From positions 25,110,001 through 25,174,000 of the forward strand of contig OZ249440.1 in NCBI GenBank assembly GCA_965235115.1: a DNA stretch of 64,000 nucleotides, read 5' to 3'. The notes below the pieces were generated by a model that was given only the letters and a program-made list of their open reading frames with translations, was not told where the DNA came from and ran no database searches. Position 1 is the stretch's first letter, and each line of letters starts with the position of its first letter. Positions 1 to 48,792 of this stretch are shown one piece after another. The position numbers and the translations under genes are program-made. Source of the DNA: Laetmonice hystrix (taxonomy: Eukaryota).

Positions 1-2
1 TT

Positions 3-4473: not shown

Positions 4474-7400
4474 ATGGGAAACCAGTACGGAAAGGAGGGG
4501 GAAAATGGAGACGCCAGCAAGGAGAGTGGTCAGGTATATAACGACGCTGAAGGGTCAAGTGGTCAAGCCAGTGGTCAGTTGGCGGGAGTGGTCAGTGGGG
4601 TTGGATCTCCGGTTGGAATACCAGTGCGGCCCAGTCGTTTGGCCATATCGCCAGACGTTGACCTTCCTCACGGTGTGAACAATGTGAGGGGAGGCGGGGG
4701 TGTTTATAATAAGGTCAAGGGGTCCGTCTCCCCGGATCACCCGGCCACCTTACATGGCATGTCGGCCCTGGGCCGCTCCCCCGGACACGTGGCCTCCAGC
4801 TCGCCAAGCCTCGCTTCCAGCACCTCCAGCCTCGGTTCAGCATCCCTGCGGAGTAGTGGCAATATTCCCATTCAACCGAGAACCGTGCCAGGCCTGTCAC
4901 GCTCCAATGCCTCCATTCAGATCGTCTCCGCGACCAGTCACGGAGGTACTGTTGGCTTCTCGAAGGATTCACAAACAGGGAAACAAAGACATGAGGATAG
5001 TGGTAAATCAAATAAAAAACTTCCGAATAGTAAATTGTCAGGTGATCTCAAAGGGGAGCCACCTGGTGGTCGTCATTCACAACAAGCTGACAGGGGACAA
5101 ATTGGCAATGCTCTGGTTAGGGGTACTGTGGCCACTGCAACTACAGCAGTCCCGAGGACAGTGAATGTCAGACCTGGGGTGCCACCTGCTGGGCGACAGC
5201 CGCAGCAGGCGGCGGTACAGATGGCCAGAGGGGGCGTGGCCAGTCCCACAGACAACCACCCGTCATACGTCACTGACGGCAGACGACCCAGCACATCCAG
5301 TATCGGCTCAACGTCAACCAGACGGTCAAGTACGGCAAGTATCAGCTCCACCCGCACCACCCCCGGCCTCCACCGGCGCTACCCCCACTCCTCACCCGGC
5401 GGGCGCTCCAAGTCCGGCAGTATATCCTCCGACCATGCTGCCGCCGCCATTGCCGCCATCCTAGGCGATAAGGTGGACTCTAGGACAGGCACAGGGTATC
5501 GCTCAGTCAGCCAGTCACCTATCATCCAAGCCATCCGAAGAACCCCCTCCGAGGACAAAAAGGCCTTTTCAGTTCGAAGGTCAAGTGGTGAGTACGGGTC
5601 TGGGCCCTTCTACACGCCCCCTGGTGGAGAACGAGGCAGCAACACCAGTCTAGCCAGTGCTGGCCAGGGAGAAGCTGATCTAAGGAGTGCAGCTTCCATC
5701 CTGGCAGCCCGCAAAACGTCGCTAGAGCAGCAACGGTCAAACCCCAACCAGGGACATTTCGGAGCAAGAAAACTCTCCCTTGATCAGGCTAAGGCGAGCG
5801 CCATGGCAGCGAAATCTGTCAAATTTAGGAGTCCACAAGAAACACAACAGATTAAACAAAACACAAGGATTGACCCTAAGGTGCCAGGCAAGGAATCAGT
5901 CAAGAAGGAAACAACACAACCAGATAAACCAAGGGGCAAAACGTCAACTCTGCCTTCTTGGGTGAAGCCAGCTGAACAGGACGTCCAACAAACAAAGTAT
6001 ACAGCTAGGCCTAGAATTACGAGGGGATCTCAAGGAGCTTCGCAAGAACACGGCACCATTGGCAACAAAGGTACTTCAGAGAGTGAGATTCTCAAGGGAA
6101 GCCCCAAGAAAGCACCAACTTCTCATGATGCTCAACAGAGTGCTGCAGAATCGAAATCAGGTAATGTCCCAAGTTGGGTGAACCGCGCTGAGGCTCAGGC
6201 ACATGTCAGACTAAGAACATCAAAACCACAGGTTGTTTCAGGACATCCTGGACTGGAACAGGACCAGACAACAGCTGGCTTCAAGGATACTGAGCAACCG
6301 AGTAATGTCAGCAATCAGTCAAAGGTTACAGTTGGACCTCAGTCAAAACTATTCTCCAAAGGTCTGCCTCTGAGGGACACTGTACAGGGGATAAAGGGCA
6401 CAGAGGGTAAACCTGGATTTAAAGTTTCGACAGAACTTCCCAAACGTGGTTCTAAGGATTTATCAGAGAACATTGTAAAACGTGGTTCTAAGGAATTATC
6501 TGAGAACATTGTAAAACGTGGTTCTAAGGATTTATCAGAGAACATTGTAAAACGTGGTTCTAAGGAATTATCAGAGAACATTGTAAAACTTGGTTCTAAG
6601 GAATTATCAGAGAACATTGTAAAGCGTGGTTCTAAGGATTTATCAGCGGGTGTTGTAAAACGTGGTTCTAAGGATTTATCAGATGTCGGTATGAAACGTG
6701 GCTCGAAAGAATTATCAAATGTAGGCATGAATCGTGGCTCAAAAGAAATGACTGACTTTGAGGCATCGTCGCGGGGGAGGGAGAAGGATAAAGAGGATTC
6801 GGCAGAAATGCTGCAGAGAAGATGCCGTGCGCTTTCACCTGATTCGAGCTGGCTGAGGACGGATGAACCTGTAACCTTGCGAACTCACCGTCCTTTAATT
6901 AAACAAACCTGCCACCGTGCATCTCGAGACATCCCAGAACCTGAGAGTAAAACTTTGGAGCAAGGCCAGACGTTCACAATGCCAAGTCGATCGGGTACGA
7001 TTGAGGAGGCTAAGCCTGCAGGGGTTGTAACAGCAGCAAAATCTGCAGAGGTCAAGATATTGAACAGTAAAACGCCTGCAAAACCTGCGGAAGTGAAAGA
7101 AGCAATGCCTGCAAAGCCTGCACAAGAGGAGACGACAGTAGGTCCAAGACCAGCAGTAGCAACGACGCCAACAAGACCTGTAGTAAAGACAAGCGCCACT
7201 CCAGCAGTAATACCTAAAAGGGCAACACCTGCAAAACCTGCACAAGTGAAGCCAGCAATAGTGCCAGCACCAGCGGCAACACCTGCAAGACCTGCACAAG
7301 TGAAGCCAGCAATAGTGCCAGCACCAGCGGCAACATCTGCAAGACCTGCACAAGTGAAGCCAGCACCAACGGCAACACCTTCAAGACCTGCACAAGTGAA

Positions 7401-10400
7401 GCCAGCACCAGCAGCAACACCTTCAAGACCTGCACAAGTGAAGCCAGCACCAGCGGCAACACCTGCACAACTGAAGCCAGCAATAGTGCCAGCACCAGCG
7501 GCAACACCTGTAAAACGTTCACAAGTGAAGCCAGCAGTAGTGCCAGCACCATTGGCAACACCTTTAAAACCTGCACAATTGAAGCCAGCAGTAGTGACAA
7601 CACCTGTAAAACCTTCACAAGTAAAGCCAGCAGTAGTGCCAGAACCAGCGGCAACACCTTTAAAACTTGCACAATTGAAGCCAGCAGTAGTGCCAGCACC
7701 ATCAGGAACACCTTCAAAGCCTCCACAAGTGAAGCCAGCAGTAGTGGCAACACCTGTAAAAACTCCACAAGTGAAGCCAGCAGTAGTGCCAGCACCATTG
7801 GCAACACCTTTAAAACCTGCACAATTGAAGCCAGCAGTAGTGACAACACCTGTAAAACCTGCACAAGTGAAGCCAGCAGTAGTGCCAGCACCGGCAGCAA
7901 CACCTTCAAAGCCTGCACAAGTGAAGCCAGCAGTAGTGCTAGCACCAGCAGCAACACCTTCAAAGCCTGCACAAATGAAGCCAGCAGTAGTGTCAACACC
8001 ATTGGCAACACCTGTAAAACCTGCACAAATGAAGCCAGCAGTCGTCACAGCACCATCGTCAACACCTGCTAAACCTGCACAAGTGAAACCAGCTGTAGCT
8101 CCAACAACAGCAGCAACACCTGCAAAACCTGCACAGGTGAAGACAGGAGTAGTTCAAACACCAGCAGCATCACCACCTGCAAAACCTGCACAGGTGATCA
8201 CAGCAGCAGCTCCAACACCAGCAGAAGTTAAGACAGCAGAAGTTCCAACATCAGTAGCAAGTGCCGCAACGCCTGCTCAGGTGACGCCAACAGTAGGTCT
8301 TCAAACAGGAATACCTGCAAAGCCTGTAAAATTAATGGCATCAGCTTTTGAACCTGCGTCAATACAACAACCTGCAAAAGCGAGGGCCGTTGTAAAGCCT
8401 GCACCTGGGAAGCAACCTGTGAGTAAAGAATCCCTTTCAGAACCTGCTGTCGTTTTAGTAAAGACCCCGGTAGAAGTATCAGCTAAACCTGCACCAGCAA
8501 TATTAAGTTCCTCAGTATCTACAAAGCCTTTACAACAAAAACCTACGGGAGATCCTGCATCAGTATCCACACCTGGTAAGACTACACAAGACTGGTCGGT
8601 ATTAGGACCTGCACAGGGGACAAAACCTGCTCAGATAAAGAATGTTACAAGTTTGGCACAGAATGCAAAGCCTGAGCAAGGTAAGCCAGTTGCAGCACCA
8701 ACAAGACCTGCACAGATAAAGACTATTGTTAGTTCTACATCACAGGCAAAATCTGCCAAAGTAAGAACTACAGTAGCTCCTGCACCAACAACTCCTGGAA
8801 AAGCTACGGCATTGAAGTCTCATAGTCAACCTGCACAAGGCAGACCAGATGTAGGACCTGCATCTGGATATGTAGCACACCTTGCTCAAGTGACTACTAC
8901 ACTTCCAAATCTAAAGCCTGAGCAACAAATAGCAGAAGTGATATCCGTAAAACCTTCACATATAAGAAGGTTTCAATCTCAAGAATCAAGTGAGAATAAA
9001 ACAACAGATAAAACTGAAATCAAGGAAATAATTAAAAATGACGAGAAAGCTTCTGTTGCACAGGTGGTAAAATCTAGATTGGTCAGTGTGGAAGATAAAC
9101 GTCAGGAGACAGTGGGAGTAAAAATAGAAGCAGGGGTTGTTGCCAAAACTACAGCAGCTGACACTAAGCCTCATGAAAAACAGCAAGGAGAAACACCTGA
9201 GGCAGCACCCCAGAAGTCCATGGTCAAAGTTTCAGTAAACACTGAAGCGAAGGTTTCAGAAACGGTGGAGGTGAAAACGGTAGGAACGGTCTCAAATAAA
9301 CCTCAGGTTCCAGCAGATGTCAAATCTACAGCTGAGGTTGATGTGGCAATGTCTCCAGTAACAGCAGAAGTCAGAACTCCAAAAACAGATGTGGCAATGA
9401 CTCCAGTAACAGCAGAAGTCAGAACTCCAAAAACAGATGTGGCAATGACCCCAGTAACAGCAGAAGTCAGAACTCCAAAAACAGATGTGGCAGTGTCTCC
9501 AGTAACAGCAGAAGTCAGAACTCCAAAAACAGATGTGGCAATGACTCCAGTAACAGCAGAAGTCAGAACTCCAAAAACAGATGTGGCAATGACCCCAGTA
9601 ACAGCAGAAGTCATAACTCCAAAAACAGATGTGGCAAAGGCTCAAGTAACAGCAGAAGTCAGAAGTCTAAAAACAGATGTGGCAATGACCCCAGTAACAG
9701 CAGAAGTCATAACTCCAAAAACAGATGTGGCAAAGGCTCAAGTAACAGCAGAAGTCAGAAGTCTAAAAACAGATGTGGCAATGACCCCAGTAACAGCAGA
9801 AGTCAGAAGTCTAAAAACAGATGTGGCAATGACCCCAGTAACAGCAGAAGTCAGAACTCCAAAAACAGATGTGGCAATGGCCCCAGTAAAAGCAGAAGTC
9901 AGAACTCCAAAAACAGATGTGGCAATGACTCCAGTCACAGCAGAAGTCAGAACTCCAAAAACAGATGTGGCAATGACCCCAGTAACAGCAGAAGTCAGAA
10001 CTCCAAAAACAGATGTGGCAATGACTCCAGTAACAGCAGAAGTGGGAACTTCAAAAACAGATGTGGCAATGACTCCAGTAACATCAGAAGTGGGAACTCC
10101 AAAAACAGATGTGGCAATGACCCCAGTAACAGCAGAAGTCATAACTCCAAAAACAGATGTGGCAATGACTCCAGTAACAACAGAAGTCAGAACGGATGTG
10201 ACAAAAGCTTCAGTCAAGGCACCAGCTCCTGTACCAGCTGAGGTTAGAACTCTAGTCACAACTCAGGCAGGTCATCCAGTAACGGTAGAGGGAAAAACAC
10301 AAGTCACAGCAGAAGTCAGTTCTCGAATAACATCTGATGCAAAAACGGCAATAAAATATGAGAGCACACCAGCAACAGCAGGGGTCAAAACTTCACCAAC

Positions 10401-13400
10401 ATCAGAGGTAAAAACATCAGTGACAGTTGAAGCAAAAACTCCAATCGCAGCTGAATTGAAAAAGGTTGAAACAGCTGGCTCCAAACAGGAACCGGAAACT
10501 GCTCCATTGAAAACATCGACGCTTGAAGAGGTCAAAACTCCAATTACGACTGAGGCAAAATCTCCCGCACAACTTGCTGTCATAACTCCAGTACCAAAAC
10601 AAGTTATATCTGTGACATCAGACAACATCCAACATCAAGTAAATACAGAGAAGACTCCGATTATAGCTGAGGTAAAAACTCCTCTAGCAACAGAAGTTAA
10701 AACTCAACTTAAGGTCATAACTCCAGTACCAGAACAAGTTATATCTGTGACATCAGACACCACCCAACATCAAGTAAATACAGAGAAGACTCCGATTATA
10801 GCTGAGGTAAAAGACAAGCAGCTGTCAACAGAGCTGAGTATTCCAGTAGAAAAACAAACGTCGGAGATGATGGCCCATATCAAATCACCAGAGGCTGTGC
10901 AGTTGGAAACGGCAGACCGGGAAAGATTACCTGAAAACATGATGCACATTAAAGAGCAGGAGACTGGGGAAATGTCTGCAGGTACACGAGCTCAAGATAT
11001 GAGAGCGAATTTAGAGGAGCAGACGGTGGGAAGGGCCGATAAAATAGCGGTTGATGGGAGAGAGGCAGGTCGCGTGGTTGGACAGACTGTAGAGGCGGGG
11101 AAGATTGATGAGGCACAGTTACAACATCAGACTCACCCAGGAGAGTCTGAGGAAATCCGCACCGCAGAGGTACAAATTGTTGAAGGAAATAAGGTGAAAT
11201 CGACTGGGAAAGACATGCTGGGACGTATGGAAAATATGCAGGATAGAGAGCGACTAGTGAATGATGCCTGTGAGCAAGGATCCGCAATGCCAGTCGGTAC
11301 TGACAGTTCTATATCAGCAGCAGAAACTGTCAAGATGCCACAGGGAGTGGTACAAAGTGGAGTGGGAGACAAAACACAGGCGGAGTGTCAGGACAAAACA
11401 GGAGGTGTGGAATCGCATGAGAAAATAACGGAGGCGAAATCTGAGGCTCATGTTGCGCTGCCAACCACTTCAACAATGGTTGGGGACGGACTGGGTGTGT
11501 CAGACCCAGTGACTCAAGTAACAACGGTTGTTAAAACACCTGTTGAACAGGTAGTCTCAGGTTCTCCCGTACATGATCGCCAGGAGAGGGTAGACATCGC
11601 AGGGGGTACAAACCCTCCAACCCCAGTGTCACCCAACACCTCCACGGAGGACGCCGCCAAACATGGCTTCCCCAAGAGGTCATCCGTTATCAGGAGGTCG
11701 GTCGTAAAGCTTCGCGAGGTGTCCACAGGGGTGCGCACCTCTCGACGAGCCGTGAAGCGGCGGTCGTGTGATCTGGACGACGATCCAACATCATTTAGCG
11801 ATCCACGTGGATCCCAGGCGCAGGCCCCCGAGGTGCAGGCAGCCTTTACACCCACCACTGTCCAGGTGCAAACAATATTGGGGCGCGGTTTGAGTGTTGT
11901 GTCAGCAGACGTAAAAACAGCCTCTCCTGTTGGCGGTGGCGGTGGTGGTGCTGGTGGTGGTGGTGGTGCCCAGCCAGCCGGAGTACCGGCGGAGCCCGAG
12001 TCAGCGGGAGGACTAGAAAGTACTGGAAAAATGGGTGATGTCAGAGGGGTCGGGTCGGATTCAGCAGGAGCAGGCCCACAGCGGGAAGGGACGACCACAG
12101 TAGTAGAGCCAGCGGTGGTGGCAGCAACAGCAGAGATGGGGCAGGGATTGGCAACGGCTGGCAACGGGCAACTCAACACTGGCAACACTGGTGTAACGTT
12201 ATCTTCTGTGTACAAGACTGCAGGCGGGACTGGACGGACTGGCCAGACACAGGGTGTGGGGATATCAAGTCATACAGTACAGAAACATGGTAATGATACC
12301 CCCCAGAAAAACACCCCCTGCTCCGATAGGGTAGAGGGTGTCTCACCGGGTGGTAGACACGTGAGTCAGCCACTGACTGTCAACTCTACCCGGGGGAGTG
12401 TGTCTCCTGCTGCAGTCGGCCCACGGTTAGTTTTACCGGGAGAGGTAGCAAGTCAACGGCCAGTTACACCTCCAGCGTTGGTCCAGCCTGGCCTGGTGGT
12501 CAGTACACATGTACCTGCAGCGTCCAGCCCTCCAGCTGCAGTTATAGGACCCCCACAGCCAGGAGGGGTCGGGGTAGGGAAGCCAACCCTCAGGGGGGTC
12601 ATACAGGGACCCCCAGTGCCCGTCGTCGTCCTGAAGCCAATCCACCCGGCGCATACACCACAGGAAGCCGGAGGTAAACCTGAGGGAGGTCAAGAGGTCA
12701 ACCAAGACGCCGGCCTCACAACATCAGCCACACCAGTAGGGGATCAACCCAGCACAGTTGTAACCGAACCAGCTCCAGGACAGATGAACCGGTCACTGAT
12801 GGCCTCCATCGTTGGGGGCGGGGCCGCCGCCAGCGCTCCGTATTCACCAGGGTCAGCCGGGGTCAGGCCAGGGGTCGGCCCCATCTGGTCGAAGGCCACC
12901 GTCTCCACCCACACTCCCCATGGACCCCATAACCGGGAGCCGTACCCTGTCACAGCGGGTAAACAGATACAGGGTTCTGTGGATAAACACCTGAGTCAAG
13001 CTCGCGTGATCCACCATCAGATATTACCGGCACCATCCCAGCACCACCAGCCACAGTTACAGCAGGCAGTACCAGAGATCACTCCAGCTACCGCCCCATC
13101 TCAACAGTCACTGAGCCGGATCCACACGACTGTCAGCCCCGGTGGTCAGCGTCCTCCAGTAAGTGACCACTCCGCCATGGGGTCCCTCCAGGGTGTGGCC
13201 AGCCCACCGGTCAGTGATCCGGAGTCTCAGAGCACCACCGTTACTTCAATGGTCAGCAGTGAGGAGGACGCCGTCCAGGTGGTCCAGGTGGCGCCCACAG
13301 TGGTCAGTGGGTCGACGTCGGCTGGGGGTGGGCAGAGACGGCACCGTGTCCGACACATCACAAGGCAGGCGGTGTTCCCGGAGGAACAGTTCACAATGAC

Positions 13401-16400
13401 GCTACAGTCTCAGCAAACTCCTGGCGCTTCACAACATTTACAGTCAGAGATAGCGTCAGAAACACAACGCATGGCTCCAGTACAACAAGCCTGGGTTAGA
13501 CCACAACATCACACAGTGACACCTTCTTCAAGTCCAAGTCAGCAAGGTTTAACAGCACCACAGACTGCTGCTCCCGGGCAACAAATTAGTTCCATGTCAC
13601 AGCAGCCATCTGCAGGCTCCACTCAGCAGGTCCAGGCAGGTTCCACTCAGCAGGTCCAGGCTAAATCAGAACAGCAAATGCCATTCATTCAGAAACCTCC
13701 ACACCAGCTGCATGACCAGGATCATCAGCCAGGTGAACACCGCTCACACACAGGTGCACAGATGACTGCAGGATGGAGAGTGCTGCCTCCTCCCCCTCCA
13801 CCAGCCGCAAGTAACCAGACCGGTCCCCAGGCGACGCTCAGGTACAGTCCAGTGACGGCCCAGGTGAACCACCCTCCCGCCTCGCCCTCGCACACCCCCG
13901 CCGTCCCCTCGGTTCGCGTCACCTCGCCGGGTGATGGGCAAGGGGCCGGGGAGATCACCCTCCACGGCCCAGTGACGAGCAGAGTTGTGCCGCGGGCGCA
14001 GGTGGCCGTCCTCACCTCGTCGTGGGCCCCAGCACCCAGCGGGCTCAGCGTACGCTGCGACTCCGCCGACAGTGTGGGACTCTCCAGCCTCGAGTACACC
14101 AGCTCCACCGAGCCAGGCTCACTGGAGAGTCTGGTCACTGAGAACCTGAGGTATTCTTCCAATTCTCCGTGTGAGATTTTACCTATATCACCAAACCATG
14201 AAGGTAACGTTAAAGTTATTTCAAATACATCTTCGAGTGAGGAGAAAGAGACGTTTATTCCAAGTGAACCGAAACAAGTGAATGAAGTGAAAGTGATTCC
14301 AAGCGCTCAACTGAAGGAAGATACTGTGAACATTTCTGTTGGAGATAACGGTGAGGATCAAGTTATTATAACACCAGGTGAGAATCAAGAGAAAGTCATT
14401 CCAAGTGTGACTGTAGATATGACCACTACACCCAGCTCACCCAAGGTCGTCAAGTATAAGTCAACTGACCAGCAAACATGGATGGCCTACTCGGAATCTG
14501 AGGACAGTCTGTCAGGGTCACCGGGTACAGGCCAGGAAGTTACAGGTGTGTCATCAAGTGGGATGCTTGAACCAGAAGGTGATAAAAAGATGGCCCAGGC
14601 ACCAGGTGTGGTGACTGCGCAGGTAGCAGGACCACAGCCGGAGACTCCGGTCTCACCATTAGCCGCCGCTGGGAGTACCCCGGACCAAACCAGCCCGGAG
14701 AGTAACCAGATAGCATCTCCTCCTGTGTGTGAGACAAAGGTCAATCAGCATGGCACGGGGTCACAGCTCAAGGTCGAGGAAGAATATGGAGCAACGCAAA
14801 CAGTGGCAGATGTTAACACACCTGACGTTAGTTCAAGGACGGCTGTTACTGAAAGATTGTCCCAGGATGACACTCAACGGACAAGTCATGTGATGTCGAT
14901 ACAGGTGTCAAGCAAGGCTGTCCATCCAAATANNNNNNNNNNNNNNNNNNNNNNNNNNNNNNNNNNNNNNNNNNNNNNNNNNNNNNNNNNNNNNNNNNNN
15001 NNNNNNNNNNNNNNNNNNNNNNNNNNNNNNNNNNNNNNNNNNNNNNNNNNNNNNNNNNNNCAATCCCTCACACCAGTTGAATATGTAGGGCAAGGACCTG
15101 CAGGGGTCTCTGCTGAAACCAGACACCAGCACGCTCCCGCCGGCCTATCTAAACAAGTTATCAAAGAACACACTGTTTGTTCGCTTCCCGGAACTCAGGC
15201 CCGAGAAAGGGAGGGGAGGGTGCAACCCGACACCCCCAGACTCAACCAGGTAGTCACCGGTTCACATGACGCTGCCAGCAAAGTTCCACAGGAACAACTG
15301 AACGCATTCATAGGCGATGAAACAAATGAGGCTATGGCGAAGATAACGGTTACAGACATTGAGCCTAGTCAGGGTGCCAGACCTGAACAACCCCCAGGTA
15401 TAACCCCACCTAGCAAAGTTCACGGCCCCCAGAATGTTCCACAGCTGGACACAGGTGCACCCCCCGACCGGAGCCAGGGCGCCGAGGTGCGTCCCAGTCC
15501 TCTGACTGGGGGTAGAGGGGTACTGGAGGAGGCCAGCGCAGGGGGCGGGGGTGGAGGGGTGCGGATGGGGGCGGGCAGTGACATGAGAACGGAATCCGAG
15601 GCAATGACTGCAGCGCCTCCCAGCGATGGCAGTGGGATCTTACAAACAAAAATAACTGAGGCAGTAAATACCGAGCATGACACAGGGATGATACAGCCAC
15701 CTGAGGACCATGCTGTGAATCAGGCCGAGGTTTGGAGTAAACCCGGGACAAACTCTGAATGTGTCACAGTTATTACAACCCACAGTGATACAAACTCTGG
15801 AAGTCTGATAAATACACGCCAATCTCACGTTGTAGTGGGTGAAGCTGATATCAACCATTCCCCGACCCCCCAGGCTGGAGAACGTGACGTCACTCGAGAA
15901 CGTGACGTCACCGGAGAACGTGACGTCACCGGAGAACGTGACGTCACCAGAGAACGTGACGTCACCGGAGAACGTGACGTCACCGGAGAATCTGACGTCA
16001 CTGGAGAACGTGACGTCACTGGAGAACGTGACGTCACTGGAGAACGTGACGTCACCGGAGAACATGACGTCACCGGAGAACCTGACGTCACTGTCGCCCA
16101 ATCAGTGGAGCAGTATGATAGTAAAACACAAGAAGTGACTGTAAGCCAGACAGGAGCACCCCCTGGTGGCCAGGTTGTACAATCAGCAGTTTCTTCTCCA
16201 AGTGAAGACACTGCCAACTTTTCGGGGCCAGACGGGGTGACCGTGCAGACCGAGTCAGTCCTAGTTACAGCTCCCATTTCAGAAACTGCCTTAGAGCACA
16301 TTTCTAAGGAAATAATAGAAGAAAAAGACACCAAAACAGCAGAAAAGGACATTTCAGGACCAGAAACTAGGGTTGAAGGTGCAAACAGTGAAATAGAGGA

Positions 16401-17529
16401 AGCTACACGTGAAGTCAAAGGGGGCGAAGTTTCCGACATATCAAAGGGTGGTGAAACAATAGTGACTGAAACTGAAGGAACAGATAAAAAGGTTGATTCT
16501 TCTCTCCAAGAAAGTGATAAAAATAAAGTAATTGAATCAGAGCCAGGAAGTCATATTGAAGAAAACAAAAGCTCAGAGGCAGATGGTCAGACGGACATCG
16601 TTGAGAAAGAGAGTGTAGGAAATGATGCATGTAAAGCAGAATCAACTGGGCCAGAACCAGAGAAGGCTGAGGAGGAGGAGGAGGAGGAGGGGGAAGTGGA
16701 GGAGAAGGAGGAGGAGTATATCTGTGCCGCTGACGTCCAGACAGCGTTTAAAATCCGACCACGACCTGTCCGTACTCCGCCGTGGGTGCTGCAGGTCCCG
16801 CCCGTCAACATTGAGGAGATAATATCGTCCTCATCAGAAGAGGAGGAAGAGGAAGAGGAGATCTCAGAGAGTGAAGAGGATGAGGAGGTTGGCGCGGCCT
16901 GCAGTACGGCAGACATGGGTGTTGGTACCAGTGAGTTAGCAGCCGACACTGTGATCTACGAGGGCATGGAGCCAGGCACCACACTCTACAGCACCATCAC
17001 CGTGGAGACAGCTTCCACAGCCCCAACGGTGGAGGAGTTCCACCACTACCACCAGGCCTGGTGGACCGCCACCAAACGGTCCATCGGGGTCCAGTTCCCG
17101 GAGCGGGTCACTGTCGGCATCCACGTCTACCCGGCTCACATCGTCGGCTCACAGTGCCCGGAGAAATGTGACGTTGGCACGTGTGTGAATCTGGACAGGG
17201 AGGAGTCGGAGATGTCGGAGGATGAGGATTATGAGAGCGAGAGTAGTTGGGAGGAGTGGTGTGACGACGAGTGGTCGGATGGGAGTTCTGGGGAGTCTGA
17301 GTTAGGGGCCACAGGTTACACACGGCCTGGACACACACTGGGTGAACACACACTGGTCGGGCACACATCCAGGGCCGAGGAGGCCAGCAGGGGGGTGGTG
17401 AGAGAGAGAGCTCAGGCTCTCGGGGATGGAGGTCTCCCGGTACAACCAGTCCAGGACAAGGGTTGGACGGTAGACGTGACAGCCATGGGAGGCGGTGTAG
17501 TCAGGTCATCCAATTATGGCCACAATTGA
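4474..17529 (+). CDS. Giant single-exon ORF (4351 aa) for an intrinsically disordered, repeat-rich protein region starting MGNQYGK; probable variable N-terminal exon of the TACC locus or a stand-alone neighbour
   Basis: About 13 kb with no stop codon; the frame is conserved across a 128-N gap; the well-defined internal tandem repeats have units divisible by 3 (36, 48, 18 bp); Met-Gly start resembles vertebrate TACC2 long isoform (MGN...). The join to the constant TACC exons is not demonstrable. Confidence 0.8.
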   Translation: MGNQYGKEGENGDASKESGQVYNDAEGSSGQASGQLAGVVSGVGSPVGIPVRPSRLAISPDVDLPHGVNNVRGGGGVYNKVKGSVSPDHPATLHGMSALGRSPGHVASSSPSLASSTSSLGSASLRSSGNIPIQPRTVPGLSRSNASIQIVSATSHGGTVGFSKDSQTGKQRHEDSGKSNKKLPNSKLSGDLKGEPPGGRHSQQADRGQIGNALVRGTVATATTAVPRTVNVRPGVPPAGRQPQQAAVQMARGGVASPTDNHPSYVTDGRRPSTSSIGSTSTRRSSTASISSTRTTPGLHRRYPHSSPGGRSKSGSISSDHAAAAIAAILGDKVDSRTGTGYRSVSQSPIIQAIRRTPSEDKKAFSVRRSSGEYGSGPFYTPPGGERGSNTSLASAGQGEADLRSAASILAARKTSLEQQRSNPNQGHFGARKLSLDQAKASAMAAKSVKFRSPQETQQIKQNTRIDPKVPGKESVKKETTQPDKPRGKTSTLPSWVKPAEQDVQQTKYTARPRITRGSQGASQEHGTIGNKGTSESEILKGSPKKAPTSHDAQQSAAESKSGNVPSWVNRAEAQAHVRLRTSKPQVVSGHPGLEQDQTTAGFKDTEQPSNVSNQSKVTVGPQSKLFSKGLPLRDTVQGIKGTEGKPGFKVSTELPKRGSKDLSENIVKRGSKELSENIVKRGSKDLSENIVKRGSKELSENIVKLGSKELSENIVKRGSKDLSAGVVKRGSKDLSDVGMKRGSKELSNVGMNRGSKEMTDFEASSRGREKDKEDSAEMLQRRCRALSPDSSWLRTDEPVTLRTHRPLIKQTCHRASRDIPEPESKTLEQGQTFTMPSRSGTIEEAKPAGVVTAAKSAEVKILNSKTPAKPAEVKEAMPAKPAQEETTVGPRPAVATTPTRPVVKTSATPAVIPKRATPAKPAQVKPAIVPAPAATPARPAQVKPAIVPAPAATSARPAQVKPAPTATPSRPAQVKPAPAATPSRPAQVKPAPAATPAQLKPAIVPAPAATPVKRSQVKPAVVPAPLATPLKPAQLKPAVVTTPVKPSQVKPAVVPEPAATPLKLAQLKPAVVPAPSGTPSKPPQVKPAVVATPVKTPQVKPAVVPAPLATPLKPAQLKPAVVTTPVKPAQVKPAVVPAPAATPSKPAQVKPAVVLAPAATPSKPAQMKPAVVSTPLATPVKPAQMKPAVVTAPSSTPAKPAQVKPAVAPTTAATPAKPAQVKTGVVQTPAASPPAKPAQVITAAAPTPAEVKTAEVPTSVASAATPAQVTPTVGLQTGIPAKPVKLMASAFEPASIQQPAKARAVVKPAPGKQPVSKESLSEPAVVLVKTPVEVSAKPAPAILSSSVSTKPLQQKPTGDPASVSTPGKTTQDWSVLGPAQGTKPAQIKNVTSLAQNAKPEQGKPVAAPTRPAQIKTIVSSTSQAKSAKVRTTVAPAPTTPGKATALKSHSQPAQGRPDVGPASGYVAHLAQVTTTLPNLKPEQQIAEVISVKPSHIRRFQSQESSENKTTDKTEIKEIIKNDEKASVAQVVKSRLVSVEDKRQETVGVKIEAGVVAKTTAADTKPHEKQQGETPEAAPQKSMVKVSVNTEAKVSETVEVKTVGTVSNKPQVPADVKSTAEVDVAMSPVTAEVRTPKTDVAMTPVTAEVRTPKTDVAMTPVTAEVRTPKTDVAVSPVTAEVRTPKTDVAMTPVTAEVRTPKTDVAMTPVTAEVITPKTDVAKAQVTAEVRSLKTDVAMTPVTAEVITPKTDVAKAQVTAEVRSLKTDVAMTPVTAEVRSLKTDVAMTPVTAEVRTPKTDVAMAPVKAEVRTPKTDVAMTPVTAEVRTPKTDVAMTPVTAEVRTPKTDVAMTPVTAEVGTSKTDVAMTPVTSEVGTPKTDVAMTPVTAEVITPKTDVAMTPVTTEVRTDVTKASVKAPAPVPAEVRTLVTTQAGHPVTVEGKTQVTAEVSSRITSDAKTAIKYESTPATAGVKTSPTSEVKTSVTVEAKTPIAAELKKVETAGSKQEPETAPLKTSTLEEVKTPITTEAKSPAQLAVITPVPKQVISVTSDNIQHQVNTEKTPIIAEVKTPLATEVKTQLKVITPVPEQVISVTSDTTQHQVNTEKTPIIAEVKDKQLSTELSIPVEKQTSEMMAHIKSPEAVQLETADRERLPENMMHIKEQETGEMSAGTRAQDMRANLEEQTVGRADKIAVDGREAGRVVGQTVEAGKIDEAQLQHQTHPGESEEIRTAEVQIVEGNKVKSTGKDMLGRMENMQDRERLVNDACEQGSAMPVGTDSSISAAETVKMPQGVVQSGVGDKTQAECQDKTGGVESHEKITEAKSEAHVALPTTSTMVGDGLGVSDPVTQVTTVVKTPVEQVVSGSPVHDRQERVDIAGGTNPPTPVSPNTSTEDAAKHGFPKRSSVIRRSVVKLREVSTGVRTSRRAVKRRSCDLDDDPTSFSDPRGSQAQAPEVQAAFTPTTVQVQTILGRGLSVVSADVKTASPVGGGGGGAGGGGGAQPAGVPAEPESAGGLESTGKMGDVRGVGSDSAGAGPQREGTTTVVEPAVVAATAEMGQGLATAGNGQLNTGNTGVTLSSVYKTAGGTGRTGQTQGVGISSHTVQKHGNDTPQKNTPCSDRVEGVSPGGRHVSQPLTVNSTRGSVSPAAVGPRLVLPGEVASQRPVTPPALVQPGLVVSTHVPAASSPPAAVIGPPQPGGVGVGKPTLRGVIQGPPVPVVVLKPIHPAHTPQEAGGKPEGGQEVNQDAGLTTSATPVGDQPSTVVTEPAPGQMNRSLMASIVGGGAAASAPYSPGSAGVRPGVGPIWSKATVSTHTPHGPHNREPYPVTAGKQIQGSVDKHLSQARVIHHQILPAPSQHHQPQLQQAVPEITPATAPSQQSLSRIHTTVSPGGQRPPVSDHSAMGSLQGVASPPVSDPESQSTTVTSMVSSEEDAVQVVQVAPTVVSGSTSAGGGQRRHRVRHITRQAVFPEEQFTMTLQSQQTPGASQHLQSEIASETQRMAPVQQAWVRPQHHTVTPSSSPSQQGLTAPQTAAPGQQISSMSQQPSAGSTQQVQAGSTQQVQAKSEQQMPFIQKPPHQLHDQDHQPGEHRSHTGAQMTAGWRVLPPPPPPAASNQTGPQATLRYSPVTAQVNHPPASPSHTPAVPSVRVTSPGDGQGAGEITLHGPVTSRVVPRAQVAVLTSSWAPAPSGLSVRCDSADSVGLSSLEYTSSTEPGSLESLVTENLRYSSNSPCEILPISPNHEGNVKVISNTSSSEEKETFIPSEPKQVNEVKVIPSAQLKEDTVNISVGDNGEDQVIITPGENQEKVIPSVTVDMTTTPSSPKVVKYKSTDQQTWMAYSESEDSLSGSPGTGQEVTGVSSSGMLEPEGDKKMAQAPGVVTAQVAGPQPETPVSPLAAAGSTPDQTSPESNQIASPPVCETKVNQHGTGSQLKVEEEYGATQTVADVNTPDVSSRTAVTERLSQDDTQRTSHVMSIQVSSKAVHPNXXXXXXXXXXXXXXXXXXXXXXXXXXXXXXXXXXXXXXXXXXXQSLTPVEYVGQGPAGVSAETRHQHAPAGLSKQVIKEHTVCSLPGTQAREREGRVQPDTPRLNQVVTGSHDAASKVPQEQLNAFIGDETNEAMAKITVTDIEPSQGARPEQPPGITPPSKVHGPQNVPQLDTGAPPDRSQGAEVRPSPLTGGRGVLEEASAGGGGGGVRMGAGSDMRTESEAMTAAPPSDGSGILQTKITEAVNTEHDTGMIQPPEDHAVNQAEVWSKPGTNSECVTVITTHSDTNSGSLINTRQSHVVVGEADINHSPTPQAGERDVTRERDVTGERDVTGERDVTRERDVTGERDVTGESDVTGERDVTGERDVTGERDVTGEHDVTGEPDVTVAQSVEQYDSKTQEVTVSQTGAPPGGQVVQSAVSSPSEDTANFSGPDGVTVQTESVLVTAPISETALEHISKEIIEEKDTKTAEKDISGPETRVEGANSEIEEATREVKGGEVSDISKGGETIVTETEGTDKKVDSSLQESDKNKVIESEPGSHIEENKSSEADGQTDIVEKESVGNDACKAESTGPEPEKAEEEEEEEGEVEEKEEEYICAADVQTAFKIRPRPVRTPPWVLQVPPVNIEEIISSSSEEEEEEEEISESEEDEEVGAACSTADMGVGTSELAADTVIYEGMEPGTTLYSTITVETASTAPTVEEFHHYHQAWWTATKRSIGVQFPERVTVGIHVYPAHIVGSQCPEKCDVGTCVNLDREESEMSEDEDYESESSWEEWCDDEWSDGSSGESELGATGYTRPGHTLGEHTLVGHTSRAEEASRGVVRERAQALGDGGLPVQPVQDKGWTVDVTAMGGGVVRSSNYGHN
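6442..6750 (+). repeat. Coding 36-bp tandem repeat (KRGSK[D/E]LSENIV), 9 units
   Basis: aaacgtggttctaagga(t/a)ttatcagagaacattgta repeated in frame. Confidence 0.95.
7222..8150 (+). repeat. Coding Pro/Ala/Thr/Lys repeats (ATPAKPAQVKPAVVPAP-type)
   Basis: Degenerate in-frame tandem units such as gcaacacctgcaaaacctgcacaagtgaagccagca. Confidence 0.9.
9337..10200 (+). repeat. Coding 48-bp tandem repeat (MTPVTAEVRTPKTDVA), about 18 units
   Basis: atgactccagtaacagcagaagtcagaactccaaaaacagatgtggca repeated in frame. Confidence 0.95.
14933..15060. other. Assembly gap (128 N) inside the giant ORF
   Basis: Run of N characters. Confidence 1.
15879..16092 (+). repeat. Coding 18-bp tandem repeat (ERDVTG) x12; every unit contains the palindrome TGACGTCA
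   Basis: gaacgtgacgtcaccgga units; TGACGTCA starts at 15885 and recurs every 18 nt to 16083. Confidence 0.95.
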
Positions 17530-32531: not shown

Positions 32532-32558
32532 ATGGCCATGTACAGGAGCACTGCGCAG
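32532..32558 (+). CDS. TACC: Candidate short alternative first coding exon (MAMYRSTAQ)
   Basis: Good Kozak context GGGATGG; 9 codons then CAG|GTAACT, a phase-0 donor compatible with the acceptor at 39962; preceded by a GC-rich UTR-like tract. Confidence 0.4.
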
Positions 32559-37215: not shown

Positions 37216-37499
37216 TGATTGACCCCAGGAGATCATTCATTGGGAGCTCATAACGACGAGGGATATAGAGGATACAGAGTGGGATGGCAGGGATTGTTCT
37301 CGACCTGTCATAGTATGTATCCCGGGACAATCTGTATCCAGGATAAGACATAAACTGGTGATATCCACAGTGATTGATAGTTTCCTCAGTCCACCGACCG
37401 GGCGGCCGCAGTCTGTATTGATCTGTGTGGTCCGTGGTGTTCACACAGCAGTCATCTGATGCAGGACCGTGTTTCCTGATGGCCACGGTCTACTCCGGC

Positions 37500-39961: not shown

Positions 39962-40059
39962 GTGACCTTCCAACCTCCGGTGAAGCCAAAGGAAGAGACG
40001 AAGGCGTCGGTTGACCTTGATGCGGCCATCGACCTCTTCAGTCAACTGTCCCTGAAAAC
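39962..40059 (+). CDS. TACC: First constant TACC exon (VTFQPPVKPKEETKASVDLDAAIDLFSQLSLK-T)
   Basis: Acceptor acctttcacctgttttag|; donor AC|GTAAGT; phase 0 in, phase 2 out, joining in frame to 41234. Confidence 0.8.
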
Positions 40060-41233: not shown

Positions 41234-43921
41234 GCCCATCAAGCCAGCAACAGACGAAAGCGTACGTGAAGATTCGACGTCGACGTCGGTGAAACCTAAA
41301 GTCAGTGATATCGGAAGCAGCCCAGCCGTTGTCAAGACCTTGCCACCATCCCAGAAGGACATCCCAGCAACTGAAGACCCCCAACCTCCAGTCAAGAAGG
41401 AAGAAGCAACAGCTGCCGAACCGCAGCCTCCAGCTCAGAAGGAAGTACTTCCAGCTGCCGAGCCCCCGGCACCAGCCAAAGAGGAGTTAACACCAGCTGA
41501 CGAGCCCAAGCCACCAGCCCAGGAGTTACCACCAGCTGACGAGCCCAAGCCACCAGCCCAGGAGGAGTTAACACCAGCTGACGAGCCCAAGCCACCAGCC
41601 CAGGAGTTACTACCAGCTGACGAGCCCAAGCCACCAGCCCAGGAGGAGGTACCACCAGCTGACGAGCCCAAGCCACCAGCACAGGAGGAGTTACCACCAG
41701 CACAGGAGAAGTTACCACCAGCTGACGAGCCCAAGCCACCAGCACAGGAGGAGTTACCACCAGTTGACGAGCCCAAGCCACCAGCCCAGGAGGAGTTACC
41801 ACCAGCACAGGAGAAGTTACCACCAGCTGACGAGCCCAAGCCACCAGTCCAGGAGGAGTTACCACCAGCTGACAAGCCCAAGCCACCAGCCCAGGAGGAG
41901 TTACCGGCATCTGAAGAGCCTCCAGCTGAGACTACACAACAAACACTTGATAAAGAACCCAAACAGCCTGTTGAAGATGTGACCTCGCTGGTTGAACCTA
42001 AAGTAGAAATAAGAGAACCAGTGCCAGCAGGAGATGAACAGACTCCTCCAGGTGATCCACATAATGTTCTCCAGGAGGAGAAGTCCTCCAGTGACAAGCC
42101 TCCTGTAGTTTTAAAAGAAGAAGGTTCTGCAGTTGAAGAAGACACCAAACCCCTTGTTGAGGAGCCAGCGGTGAAGCATCTAAAGCCTGGCGATGTGAAA
42201 ACTGGTCAGACCGCCCGTCCTGTTACACCAGAACCTGAAGATGACGACTTTAAAGACTGTGTGACTTCACTGCCGAACTCTCCAGAGAAGCCTCAAGAAG
42301 AGGCCCCTGTGGCAGCGTCACCAAGCGTCGAAGAAGATAACGAGATAGTTTTCAATGTTAAGGACCGAGATGTAGAACCGAAAATCTCATCGGAACAAAA
42401 TCAGCCTGAAGTCTTGGTCACACCGGTGGTGGCTCAGGTAGAGTCTCGGACAGACTCAACTGATGTCCACGCTAAACCGGCAGGTGAGCCTGCTATTGGT
42501 CACGAAATAAAGTCCCCAGCCAAGTCAGCTCCTGAAAAGTCTGACTCGGACACTGTTCAAAGTCCAGAAGCAGCTGCAGCAGAGTCTGCGCCAGTAGAAG
42601 AGGCTGCCCCTCAGGTGACTGAACCTTGTGAATCAGCAGACACAACACCAGCTTCTCATACTGGTGTTGACAAGGAAGAGGAAACAAAAGCTGTACCAGA
42701 AAAATTGGAACCAGAAGTAGTCCCAGAAAAAGTGGTGGAAGAAAATTCTGCTGTCAAAGAAACCTCGGCCAAGCAAGAAGAAAAGCCTGAGCCTGAAAAA
42801 GAAAGTGCACACTCTGAAGATAAGTTAACCGTAGAAGAACCTTCTCAGCCAGAACCTGTCTTACCCAAGAACCAAGAAGAGGAGGTCAAGCCAAAAGAGG
42901 TAGCGCCAGAACCTGCGGAAGTTGTAGAAGAGATTTCTAAACCCGAACCAACTCCTGCACAAAAACACCCAGAAGTTGTGCATGAACAGGATACTTCGGA
43001 GGACACTAAAACCAAACCAGAAGACATCCCTATTGTGGAACAGTCCGTTTCCTTACCAGCTCCCATAGAATCAGAGGAACCTAAGCCAAAGGAAGTACCA
43101 GAGCAGGAGGATATTCAGCCTGCAGCCTCAGAACCTGAGGCTGTGTCTGAGCCAGCACAGGCGCTGAAAACTACGCCTAAACTGGAAGCAGCCACGAAGC
43201 AGATCGCTGATGAGATCTTCTCAGACCTTGCAAAGTCAACGGTTCTTAAAGAGAAGAAACCAGTGATTGAGGTGAACCAATTAACAACACCGGCACTAGA
43301 ATCTGAGCCTGACCAATCAGAGAAAGTAACAGACCAAACGCCGCCCCAGTTGGAGGAAGCCAGAGAGCCTTCAGAAGAGGCAGCCAAGGCAGAACCTCTA
43401 CAGGCGCCGACAGCGGAACCTCAAGCACCCGAATCAGGCGCTGAGGACCCGCTACAAGCGGCTCCAGTTGAGGAGTCTAACGACAACACTGTGGAAGCAA
43501 AGGATTCCGAGCAGCCTCGTAGTGAGGCAGTTCCGATTCCGGCTTCTAACCAACCTGCAGCCATGGACGACAATGTCCAACCTGCATCTCCCCCTATTCT
43601 GCCGAAGGGGTCGTATCAGTTTGATTTCGACAGTTTCGATGAAAACACAAACCCGTTTGCAACCAAAGTAAAGCTTGGCAGTTCACCACCGGTGAACAAG
43701 CCAACCACATTGGACATCAACAGCGGGGACTTTGACCCCTTCAAACCGAGTAAAACTTTGTCTAGTTCACCGCCGTCGTCGCCAAGGACGACGCTAGCTG
43801 ATGCAATAGACAACAATCAGGTGGACAATGTCAACTCGGATAGTAGCAGAAACTTTGGGGAGACTACAACAGTTAGCGATGCAACCGCCATGCCACCCCC
43901 TGAACCAAAGAAAACACCAAA
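41234..43921 (+). CDS. TACC: Large constant TACC exon (2688 nt, phase 2/2): PEVK-like repeats plus SDP-repeat motifs
   Basis: Acceptor tgtgtatttgcag|; donor AA|GTAAGT; PPILPKGSYQFDFDSFDENTNPFATKVKLGSSPP...DFDPFKPSKTLSSSPPSSP closely parallels vertebrate TACC2 IPIAKGTYTFDIDKWDDPNFNPF...VDPFKTSSKTPSSPSKSP (recalled); in-frame ELPPADEPKPPAQE repeats 41470-41900. Confidence 0.88.
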
Positions 43922-44172
43922 GTAAGTGCACCTTTATATATTTAAAAAAAAAAAAAAAAAAAAAAATTGAAGTGAGAAATTATCATTTGCAAGTCTATTT
44001 TAAGAAATACCAGAACCTACATACATATAATGAACCGTATTCTTAAAATGTTGAGTATAAGGAAACAATTTCCGTACATATAAATAAACTTTTACTCGCT
44101 GATTGAACTTTTAGACTGCAGTTTCCCTGAGGGTAACTTAAAATGTTTGGTTTATTTTGTGGTGTGTTTTAG

Positions 44173-44867: not shown

Positions 44868-45236
44868 ACTTTAGTGAGACATAGAGTGGGCTACGCTGAA
44901 CTTGAGTGAGACATAGAGTGGGCTACGCTGAACTTGAGTGAGATATAGAGTGGGCTACGCTGAACTTGAGTGAGACATAGAGTGGGCTACGCTGAACGTG
45001 GGTGAGATATAGAGTGGGCTACGCTGAACTTGAGTGAGACATAGAGTGGGCTACGCTGAACGTGAGTGAGATATAGAGTGGGCTACGCTGAACTTGAGTG
45101 AAACATAGAGTGGGCTACGCTGAACTTGAGTGAGACATAGAGTGGGCTACGCTGAACTTGAGTGAGATATAGAGTGGGCTACGCTGAACTTGAGTGAGAT
45201 ATAGAGTGGGCTACGCTGAACTTGAGTGAGATATAG
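44868..45236. repeat. 32-bp minisatellite, about 11 copies
   Basis: tgagtgagacatagagtgggctacgctgaact repeated. Confidence 0.95.
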
Positions 45237-45353
45237 ACGGCTCAGCGCAGTGTGGTTAGTTCTTACCTGTGGTACCAGGGGGCAGCAGTGGTTGATGGTC
45301 GTGATGTTGGTGGTGGTGCACCGCAAGCACAACATGGATGTTATTTTGACCAG

Positions 45354-47930: not shown

Positions 47931-48000
47931 GAAAAAGACTGGACCGGCTAAGAAAACGTTACCAAAGAGAACCAAGTTCAGGCCTCCTAGCTTTACACCT
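47931..48000 (+). CDS. TACC: Constant TACC exon (KKTGPAKKTLPKRTKFRPPSFTP), basic NLS-like
   Basis: Acceptor ttgtttttattag|; donor CCT|GTAAGT; phase 2 in, 0 out, bridging 43921 to 48477 exactly. Confidence 0.8.
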
Positions 48001-48476: not shown

Positions 48477-48792
48477 AGTGACGGCGGTGACGATGTGCAG
48501 ATATTCGTGCCAGGGGAGCCACCGGCCCGGTCTGAGACGACCCCGCCGGGCGGTGACACCGGCCCGTCCCCCACCACCACCACGGCGGGTCCCACCCCGG
48601 CACAGGTCACCCCGCCTGAGGGCGACGATCACCTTCAAACCTCACCCAGCCCGCCCGCCACCGAGCCTGGATTACCGACTGACGGGACGGCGGTGGCGGC
48701 GGCGGCCGGGGGGCCGTTCGGGAGTACCTTTCCTGATCAGAATGGAGCCCTCGACGAGTTCGATGATGAAGAATTCCTGCCAGCTTCAGAAG
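48477..48792 (+). CDS. TACC: Constant TACC exon (SDGGDDVQIFVPGE...GALDEFDDEEFLPASE)
   Basis: Acceptor gatgtgtttag|; donor AAG|GTGAGT; phase 0 in, 1 out. Confidence 0.8.

What the first reader, a model, noticed from the sequence alone, without database searches (positions are those of the whole stretch)
4474..48792. TACC locus with a protocadherin-like array of giant variable N-terminal exons, each starting Met-Gly, feeding a shared constant region
Seen: three large intronless ORFs start MGNQYGK (4474), MGQEGSK (19510) and MGNVEGG (25269). Each has a candidate splice acceptor 17-51 nt upstream of the ATG (4422, 19476, 25251). A tiny exon (32532) and the 25269 exon both end in phase-0 CAG|GT donors matching the phase-0 acceptor of the first constant exon (39962), and the constant chain closes perfectly in frame to 48792. 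Established: Met-Gly starts (especially MGxxxS/K) are N-myristoylation signals; TACC proteins are centrosome/microtubule adaptors acting with ch-TOG/XMAP215; vertebrate TACC2-long begins MGN and has a giant exon (recalled). Inference: one gene builds a family of lipid-anchored isoforms with disordered N-terminal spacers of very different length (about 10 to 4000 aa) on one coiled-coil C-terminus, chosen by alternative promoters or mutually exclusive exons.
Basis: partly seen in the sequence, partly recalled or inferred. Interest (0 to 1): 0.85.

Follow-up and report, generated by a model that had tools for sequence, protein, structure and literature searches.

The report
Worm TACC gene with giant 5' exons

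Summary
The sequence-level observation holds. Three long + strand ORFs are present: 4474-17529, 19510-21654 and 24954-27575. The constant chain 39962-40059 / 41234-43921 / 47931-48000 / 48477-48792 closes in frame. TACC_C exons lie 17-19 kb beyond the window, at the only TACC_C locus found in the genome.

A divergent relative (ENA ERZ26222911) keeps the same three ORFs in the same order and spacing. It conserves the starts MGQExSK and MGNVEGGE.

- The three ORFs are not paralogous, so a defining feature of protocadherin or UGT1A arrays is not met.
- Coding in the third ORF begins about 95 codons upstream of its Met-Gly, at a conserved ATG at 24984. MGNVEGG is therefore internal to the long form.
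- The acceptor at 19476 is poor.
- The tail of the 13-kb ORF looks coding up to its own stop, so that ORF may be a separate gene.
- All four public runs that hold the locus behave as DNA, so no splice junction could be checked.

My estimates are: alternative first coding exons on one TACC body about 0.5; the giant ORF as a separate gene about 0.3; one serial giant transcript about 0.15. The assembly gap cannot be judged for frame.

The parts
4423..4473 (+). Putative 5' UTR segment behind a good acceptor (AG at 4421-4422). All three frames are closed before the ATG, and there is a 5-codon upstream ORF.
4474..17529 (+). ORF1. A giant open frame of 3486 codons, the 128-N gap, then 822 codons and a stop. 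It starts MGNQYGK and is rich in in-frame tandem repeats. It has no Pfam domain. The best-scoring late donor is at 17398 (phase 0), but the tail to the stop also looks coding.
14933..15060 (.). Assembly gap (N) inside ORF1. Continuity and frame are not known, and it was not filled.
19510..21402 (+). Exon 2. It starts MGQEGSK. The first ~190 aa are 54% identical to the relative's P0018, which starts MGQEVSK; the rest evolves fast. The coding signal ends near 21403 (phase-0 GT), and the ORF tail to 21654 looks non-coding.
24984..27500 (+). Exon 3. Coding starts about ATG 24984 (the ESMS block is conserved). Other conserved islands are MGNVEGGE (25269), SSGDEFEDAAD and a GSYNLDFLD...NPF motif. 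There is a strong phase-0 donor at 27501.
25250..25251 (+). Good AG acceptor 17 nt upstream of the MGNVEGG ATG. It could give a shorter Met-Gly form. Its use is untested.
32532..32558 (+). It does not start Met-Gly. There is no conservation or RNA evidence, so its status is open.
39962..40059 (+). First constant exon. Strong phase-0 acceptor and a GTAAGT donor.
41234..43921 (+). Large constant exon. It is acidic and proline-rich, with in-frame repeats and a second GSYQFDFD...NPF / DFDPF motif.
47931..48000 (+). Small lysine-rich constant exon. It was by far the best candidate with the required phases.
48477..48792 (+). Constant exon ending in an acidic ...EFDDEEF... stretch. The chain carries 1 nt onward. 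Later exons, including TACC_C, lie beyond the window at 64001+ (about 66.9, 69.7, 75.8, 81.2, 81.5 and 83.1 kb on the same scale).

Best explanation
The window holds the 5' two-thirds of the single TACC gene of an annelid-like animal. The shared body (exons from 39962 onward) ends in the TACC coiled coil, which in other organisms dimerises and binds the microtubule polymerase ch-TOG/XMAP215.

Upstream of that body lie very large exons that encode disordered, repeat-rich sequence. Most likely they are alternative first coding exons, each with its own start codon and nested promoter or 5' leader. They would join the phase-0 acceptor at 39962 through phase-0 donors at 21403 and 27501, and possibly 17398 and 32559. 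The result would be isoforms with very different N-terminal extensions on one C-terminus.

Two of the starts carry a conserved N-myristoylation-type Met-Gly signal: 4474 and 19510. A third, 25269, would do so only if the acceptor at 25251 is used. Those isoforms could therefore be membrane-tethered.

Shown: the ORFs, their conservation, the motifs, the TACC_C identity and the phase compatibility. Inferred: every splice, the promoters and the lipidation.
For: TACC identity:
- TACC_C exons lie on the same strand, at the only such locus found in the genome.
- The constant chain closes in frame, with phase-consistent candidate exons onward.

The ORFs are real exons:
- The relative keeps ORFs of 4873-4890, 650 and 817 aa at 1.9 and 3.2 kb spacing, against 2.0 and 3.3 kb here.
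- The starts MGQEVSK and MGNVEGGE are conserved.
- Indels between the exons are not multiples of 3, and none were seen inside the exons.

Each exon looks like a translation start:
- The ORF1 ATG is a forced N-terminus.
- In exons 2 and 3 the coding or conserved signal begins at an ATG 12-15 codons after an in-frame stop.
- The only acceptors in that interval are poor (-4.8, 0.7, 0.4, -0.3, -1.1). Four acceptors fixed by the TACC_C match score 1.1-6.9.

Exon 2 joins the constant body rather than exon 3:
- The exon 2 tail after 21403 is non-coding-like.
- A phase-0 join from exon 2 to the good acceptor at 25251 would run into a stop (frame listing). A join to 39962 stays open.

Precedent: alternative promoters giving long and short proteins are documented for human TACC2 (PMC6143958).
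Against: - There is no transcript evidence at all. X1-X4 are DNA; X3 contigs lie in the proposed introns and cross 17398 and 19476 unspliced.
- The 43 codons after the 17398 donor score as coding (only 3% of open intronic windows score as high), so ORF1 may end at its own stop.
- Donor-like GTs are common inside these exons (19 with score >=7.5 in ORF1), so the donor calls are weak.
- The 11 codons before the exon 2 ATG also score coding-like (top 4%, but n=11).
Confidence: 0.5

Rival explanations
1. ORF1 (4474-17529), and perhaps also ORF2, is a separate gene lying head to tail upstream of TACC. It would encode a giant, Met-Gly-initiated, repeat-rich disordered protein that ends at its own stop codon. 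The TACC gene proper would start at exon 2 or exon 3.
For: - The ORF1 tail from 17398 to the stop is coding-like (3% of open intronic windows score as high).
- Heterozygous sites up to 17370 are 6 synonymous to 1 non-synonymous.
- ORF1 has no TACC-type motif and no similarity to the other exons.
- The acceptors in front of exon 2 are poor.
- Searches with the ORF1 N- and C-terminal parts found no long homologue joined to anything.
Against: - There is no AATAAA or ATTAAA in the 2.1 kb between ORF1 and exon 2.
- That leaves only 2.0 kb for a 3' UTR plus the next promoter, in a genome with 2-18 kb introns.
- This spacing is kept in the relative.
- A phase-0 donor (7.9) sits 131 nt before the stop and matches the phase-0 constant acceptor.
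- The ORF2 tail is non-coding-like and unconserved, so ORF2 at least must splice onward.
Confidence: 0.3
2. The three ORFs are consecutive internal exons of one transcript, giving a single TACC protein of more than 7,000 residues that starts at MGNQYGK. The later Met-Gly motifs would be internal peptides.
For: - The frames allow it. Donor 17398 (phase 0) to acceptor 19476 or 19503 (phase 0) stays open through to the MGQEGSK ATG.
- The 11 codons before that ATG look coding.
- Exon 3 is coding upstream of MGNVEGG.
- There is no poly(A) signal after ORF1.
Against: - The acceptors it needs are all at or below the weakest acceptor fixed by the TACC_C match: 19476, 19503, and 24961, 24965 or 24978.
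- In exon 3, conservation and codon signal start at an ATG (ESMS), not at an AG. The 15 codons before it look non-coding.
- The 8/8 conservation of MGNVEGGE and the conserved MGQExSK start have no obvious reason if they are internal.
Confidence: 0.15
3. The big ORFs are non-functional: chance open frames in low-complexity DNA, or decaying pseudo-exons.
For: - Pfam, Atlas and homologue searches give nothing for most of their length.
- The distal part of exon 2 shows 0 synonymous to 10 non-synonymous heterozygous sites.
Against: - Open frames of 3486+822, 714 and 873 codons are far beyond chance.
- All three are kept open in a relative at 32-54% identity, and on two contigs of that relative's assembly (4890 and 4873 aa).
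- Repeat periods are divisible by 3.
- The 3' end of ORF1 shows 6 synonymous to 1 non-synonymous sites.
Confidence: 0.03

Closest known systems
TACC family genes with alternative promoters (human TACC2 long and short isoforms; also TACC1 variants)
   Same: A shared C-terminal TACC coiled coil sits behind long, acidic, Ser/Pro-rich disordered N-terminal regions. For human TACC2, promoter choice gives a long and a much shorter protein (PMC6143958). Several TACC1 splice variants are described (PMC8665927). From my own recall, not tested here: TACC2-long has one multi-kb exon and starts Met-Gly-Asn.
   Different: This genome has one TACC_C locus, so the gene is a pre-duplication invertebrate TACC and not a TACC2 orthologue. 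It has three very large 5' ORFs (13.1, 1.9 and 2.5 kb), at least two with their own conserved start. Usage is unproven.
Invertebrate TACCs acting with XMAP215-family polymerases (Drosophila D-TACC with Msps, C. elegans TAC-1 with ZYG-9)
   Same: One TACC gene per genome, with a conserved TACC domain that pairs with the polymerase (PMC11921806). Repeated 'G-x-Y-x-x-D-F-(L)D ... NPF' modules like those in exon 3 and the 41-kb exon occur in unnamed invertebrate-type proteins (P0002-P0004).
   Different: TAC-1 is little more than the TACC domain. Nothing like a 4,000-residue exon or Met-Gly starts is described for these, as far as I could find.
Clustered protocadherin / UGT1A variable-exon arrays
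   Same: Large 5' exons lie in tandem, each possibly with its own start, and their donors are phase-compatible with one constant acceptor.
   Different: The variable exons here are not paralogues of one another, there are only three or four, and they do not encode equivalent domains. Promoter choice and cis-splicing to the constant exon are untested.

Membership tests
TACC family | C-terminal TACC_C coiled-coil domain (Pfam PF05010) | tested here: met
   Three exon-level matches score above the curated cut-off at C5:25191211-25193267, on the same strand 17-19 kb past the window end. One exon was re-scored at 32.3 bits. The exon chain from 48792 to there is only partly resolved.
TACC family | Long acidic, Ser/Pro-rich N-terminal region with short conserved aromatic-acidic/NPF motifs | tested here: met
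   The exons have net charge -7 to -17 per 100 aa and are P/E/S-rich. GSYNLDFLD..NPF occurs in exon 3 and GSYQFDFD..NPF / DFDPF in the 41-kb exon. That these motifs are typical of TACCs rests on my own knowledge.
TACC family | Binding of ch-TOG/XMAP215 and localisation to centrosome or spindle | not testable with these tools
   Function known from other organisms (PMC11921806).
Vertebrate TACC2 (orthology) | One of three or more TACC paralogues | tested here: not met
   Only one TACC_C locus was found in the 627-Mb genome. Other agents' notes call the genome annelid.
Protocadherin/UGT1A-type variable-exon array | Tandem variable exons are paralogues encoding equivalent domains | tested here: not met
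   All-against-all BLASTP of ORF1, exon 2 and exon 3 gave no hit at E<=0.01.
Protocadherin/UGT1A-type variable-exon array | Each variable exon has its own promoter and is spliced directly to the first constant exon | not testable with these tools
   No RNA run was found. All four runs are DNA.
Protocadherin/UGT1A-type variable-exon array | Variable-exon donors are phase-compatible with the constant acceptor | tested here: met
   Donors 17398, 21403/21478, 27501 and 32559 are all phase 0, and acceptor 39962 is phase 0. The donor calls themselves are uncertain.
N-myristoylated proteins | Met-Gly followed by the pattern G-{EDRKHPFYW}-x(2)-[STAGCN]-{P} | tested here: met
   The pattern is met at 4474, 19510 and 25269, and in the relative's P0018 and P0001. 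About 5% of internal Met residues in these ORFs also fit it.
N-myristoylated proteins | The Gly is residue 2 of the translated product | tested here: inconclusive
   ORF1: yes, if it is translated, because all frames are closed upstream. Exon 2: likely (stop 12 codons upstream, poor acceptors). Exon 3: no for the long form, which starts at 24984; possible only through the acceptor at 25251.
N-myristoylated proteins | Covalent myristate on the protein | not testable with these tools
   Needs labelling or mass spectrometry.

The most novel reading that the evidence does not exclude
An invertebrate TACC gene makes, from nested promoters, a set of N-myristoylated isoforms. Their conserved Met-Gly starts would anchor a TACC/ch-TOG microtubule-growth module to membranes through disordered spacers of about 600 to more than 4,000 residues. 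That would be a length-graded membrane-to-microtubule tether, not described for any TACC.
Probability: 0.2. Interest if true: 0.7.

Novelty: new variant of a known kind. Interest (0 to 1): 0.45.

Why it matters
TACC proteins are studied almost entirely through their C-terminal coiled coil. Little attention has gone to why their N-terminal regions are so long and variable. If one gene hangs that coiled coil on several alternative giant spacers that carry a lipid anchor, it would link microtubule growth control to membranes. It would also give a natural series for asking what spacer length does.

If instead the 13-kb ORF is a separate gene, the locus is an ordinary TACC gene next to an unknown giant disordered protein. 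That is of modest interest. Either way, the exons need RNA data to be annotated correctly.

Tried and rejected
- RNA evidence. Two run searches found only X1-X4, all from one sample. X3 looked like a possible transcriptome: 59 M letters, 0.84 of the words of the 41-kb exon but only 0.24 of an exon-plus-intron stretch. Laying it on 16500-22499 showed contigs inside the proposed introns and across 17398 and 19476 unspliced, so it is low-coverage DNA. No junction could be tested.
- Homologue searches. Searches with ORF1 residues 1-500 and 3900-4351 gave no hit, so the relative's 4873-4890-aa ORF could not be retrieved. The relative's contigs were listed without DNA. Splice-site conservation and dN/dS upstream of the ATGs could therefore not be computed.
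- Domain searches. Pfam on all large exons found no domain. The Atlas feature search on the ORF1 C-terminal part and the exon 2 N-terminal part gave no usable hit.
- Retrocopy or paralogue search in the own genome, using the first constant exon and the exon 2 N-terminus, found only self matches.
- Other sequence signals. The CpG observed/expected profile as a promoter marker showed weak peaks near 4-5, 19-19.5 and 24-25 kb, but others elsewhere, so it is not decisive. PWM splice scores do not discriminate well, because strong donor-like sites are frequent inside the exons.
- My first reading, a fish TACC2 orthologue, was dropped. The genome has a single TACC_C locus, and other agents' notes call it annelid.
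- Still et al. 2004 on TACC gene evolution is not held in the library.

Full report
WHAT IS IN THE SEQUENCE

The + strand carries three very long open frames: 4474-17529 (4351 codons as written), 19510-21654 (714 aa) and 24954-27575 (873 aa). A fourth large open segment lies at 41202-43925.

The translations are low-complexity, rich in Pro, Ser, Thr, Ala and Glu, and mostly acidic. Every tandem repeat inside them has a period divisible by three: 36, 54, 42, 48, 18, 36, 39, 42/63/105. None has a Pfam domain.

The window is G000:C5:25110001-25174000 of a 627-Mb genome.

THE ASSEMBLY GAP (14933-15060, 128 N)

On each side exactly one frame is open, for 3486 and 822 codons. With 128 N the two frames coincide. 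The gap length is only an estimate, so the coincidence proves nothing.

The only indirect argument for one continuous exon comes from the relative described below. It has a single ORF of 4873-4890 aa at this position, longer than either flank alone. The gap could still hide an intron, a stop or a frameshift. I did not try to fill it.

IT IS A TACC GENE, AND THE ONLY ONE

A six-frame search of the whole genome with Pfam TACC_C (PF05010) found three exon-sized matches above the curated cut-off. All lie at C5:25191211-25193267, on the same strand, 17-19 kb beyond the window end. One was re-scored at 32.3 bits.

No other TACC_C locus was found. Other agents' notes on this genome call it an annelid. 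I therefore dropped my first reading (a fish TACC2) and treat this as the single invertebrate-type TACC.

Exons 39962-40059, 41234-43921, 47931-48000 and 48477-48792 join into 1057 codons without a stop. Phase-consistent candidate exons follow at about 66.96 and 69.68 kb, and then the first coiled-coil exon at 75.83 kb on the same scale. That part of the chain is not fully resolved.

Exon 3 and the 41-kb exon share a GSY-x-x-DF-x-D...NPF motif. The same motif is repeated many times in unnamed invertebrate-type proteins, P0002-P0004.

THE BIG ORFS ARE REAL EXONS

A profile-free search of 1.8 billion representatives with exon 3 found P0001 (817 aa, 32-36% identity). A word-indexed search with ORF2 found P0018 (650 aa, 54% identity over the first ~190 residues).

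Both come from one ENA assembly, ERZ26222911. Its contigs carry, in order:
- an ORF of 4890 or 4873 aa;
- a 1.9-kb space;
- the 650-aa ORF;
- a 3.2-kb space;
- the 817-aa ORF.

The spaces here are 2.0 and 3.3 kb. No DNA was returned for those contigs.

In this species' own DNA runs, indels of 1, 2, +2 and 1 nt lie between ORF1 and exon 2, and indels of 9, +14 and +1 nt lie after exon 2. None lies inside the exons. Heterozygous sites at the 3' end of ORF1 are 6 synonymous to 1 non-synonymous. In exon 2 they are 4:2 in the conserved first 190 residues and 0:10 in the rest, which therefore evolves almost freely while staying open.

THE MET-GLY STARTS

All three fit the PROSITE-type myristoylation pattern, as do the relative's MGQEVSK and MGNVEGGE. 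About 5% of internal Met residues in these ORFs fit it too. The pattern alone is therefore notable for the first Met of ORF1 and of ORF2, but not for exon 3.

- ORF1. Behind the good acceptor at 4422, all three frames hit a stop before the ATG. MGNQYGK is therefore a forced N-terminus if the ORF is translated.
- Exon 2. An in-frame stop lies 12 codons upstream, and the relative's called protein starts at the same Met.
- Exon 3. The frame is open 110 codons upstream of MGNVEGG.
  - The stretch 24984-25268 aligns with P0001 at about the same identity as the rest, with the frame kept (ESMS, GIPA and GSDGV blocks).
  - Its codon score (0.24) exceeds all 209 open intronic windows of the same length. 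The 15 codons before ATG 24984 look non-coding.
  - The long form therefore most likely starts Met-Ser at 24984.
  - MGNVEGGE is still one of about five perfectly conserved islands in 840 residues, and a good acceptor (25251, score 3.9) sits 17 nt before its ATG. A shorter Met-Gly form remains possible.

PARALLEL, SERIAL OR SEPARATE?

There is no RNA evidence. The only runs that hold the locus are X1-X4, all from one sample. X3, which I hoped was a transcriptome, has contigs inside the proposed introns and across 17398 and 19476 unspliced. What follows is inference from sequence.

For alternative first coding exons:
- In exons 2 and 3 the coding or conserved signal starts at an ATG within 12-15 codons of an in-frame stop.
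- The only AGs in that interval score -4.8, 0.7, 0.4, -0.3 and -1.1. Four acceptors fixed by the TACC_C match score 1.1-6.9, and 39961 scores 5.2.
- The exon 2 tail after 21403 is non-coding-like, and the AT skew drops there.
- A phase-0 join of exon 2 to the good acceptor at 25251 runs into a stop. A join to 39962 stays open.
- The best-scoring terminal donors (17398, 21403/21478, 27501, 32559) and the constant acceptor are all phase 0.

For a separate ORF1 gene:
- The 43 codons between 17398 and the stop look coding; only 3% of open intronic windows score as high.
- ORF1 shares nothing with TACC.

Against a separate ORF1 gene:
- There is no canonical poly(A) signal in the next 2.1 kb.
- The spacing is short and conserved.

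For a serial transcript:
- The frames allow it.
- The 11 codons before the exon 2 ATG score coding-like, though n=11.

My odds are: parallel about 0.5, ORF1 separate about 0.3, serial about 0.15.

COMPARISON WITH KNOWN SYSTEMS

The C-terminal function can be taken from the family. [quoted passage not shown] Alternative promoters giving long and short proteins are documented for human TACC2 (PMC6143958). TACC1 has many variants (PMC8665927).

The 'protocadherin-like' label fails its defining feature, because the three ORFs are not paralogues. I found no paper linking TACC to myristoylation.

The locus is best filed as a new variant of a known kind: a TACC gene with nested 5' exons. It is unusual for the size of those exons (13.1 kb) and for the conserved Met-Gly starts. 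Its isoform logic and any membrane anchoring remain to be shown.

Noticed in passing
window 1-965, continuing 180 nt upstream into L007: A 382-codon open segment on the + strand (GC 0.64 at its start) that ends in EDSGM(T/A)L repeats. It has no Pfam hit. It may be the last exon of the upstream neighbour. It cannot be fused to ORF1, because all frames close before 4474.
   Followed up: partly
window 22995-23634, 32643-33232, 36348-36680, 36818-37221, 37511-38055, 44865-45237; also 60.8-61.6 and 62.0-63.1 kb: Many high-identity (93-99%) intronic minisatellites with units of 22-127 nt. Several make long spurious ORFs on both strands.
   Followed up: no
window 19510-21402: Exon 2 is split in its constraint. 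The first ~190 residues are 54% identical to the relative, with 4 synonymous to 2 non-synonymous heterozygous sites. The remaining ~440 residues are barely alignable, with 0 synonymous to 10 non-synonymous sites, yet the frame stays open in both species.
   Followed up: partly
window 21403-21500: Just past the likely exon 2 donor, the read-through translation shares spaced residues with the tail of P0018 (GGR ... PP ... CM ... C-HQF, at nearly the same spacing), although the codon score is non-coding. It may be a conserved intronic splicing element.
   Followed up: no
window 19969 and 26344: Very strong donor-like sites lie inside the exons: 11.1 at 19969 (phase 0, right after the conserved PTGK of exon 2) and 11.4 at 26344. 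They could be alternative internal donors or chance.
   Followed up: no
L004, about 3400-5850 (67.4-69.9 kb on the window scale): A long tandem array whose translation repeats YRDTGRVEDGGMIQGYREGRGWWND. It lies inside the large intron between 48792 and the next candidate TACC exons.
   Followed up: no
L006 4184-4594 (+): About 5 kb downstream of the last TACC exon, an ORF starts MSGPITSQELACIYSAAILADDD. It looks like an acidic ribosomal stalk protein (P1/P2 type), judged from my own knowledge only.
   Followed up: no
P0002-P0004 (ENA contigs of 1.5-3.5 kb): Unnamed proteins built almost wholly of 4-6 repeats of a KGAYNLDFLDNLDDPNFNPFETKTKV-type module separated by basic 'PPKRxPPKLG' linkers. 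The window's TACC carries two diverged copies of the same module.
   Followed up: partly
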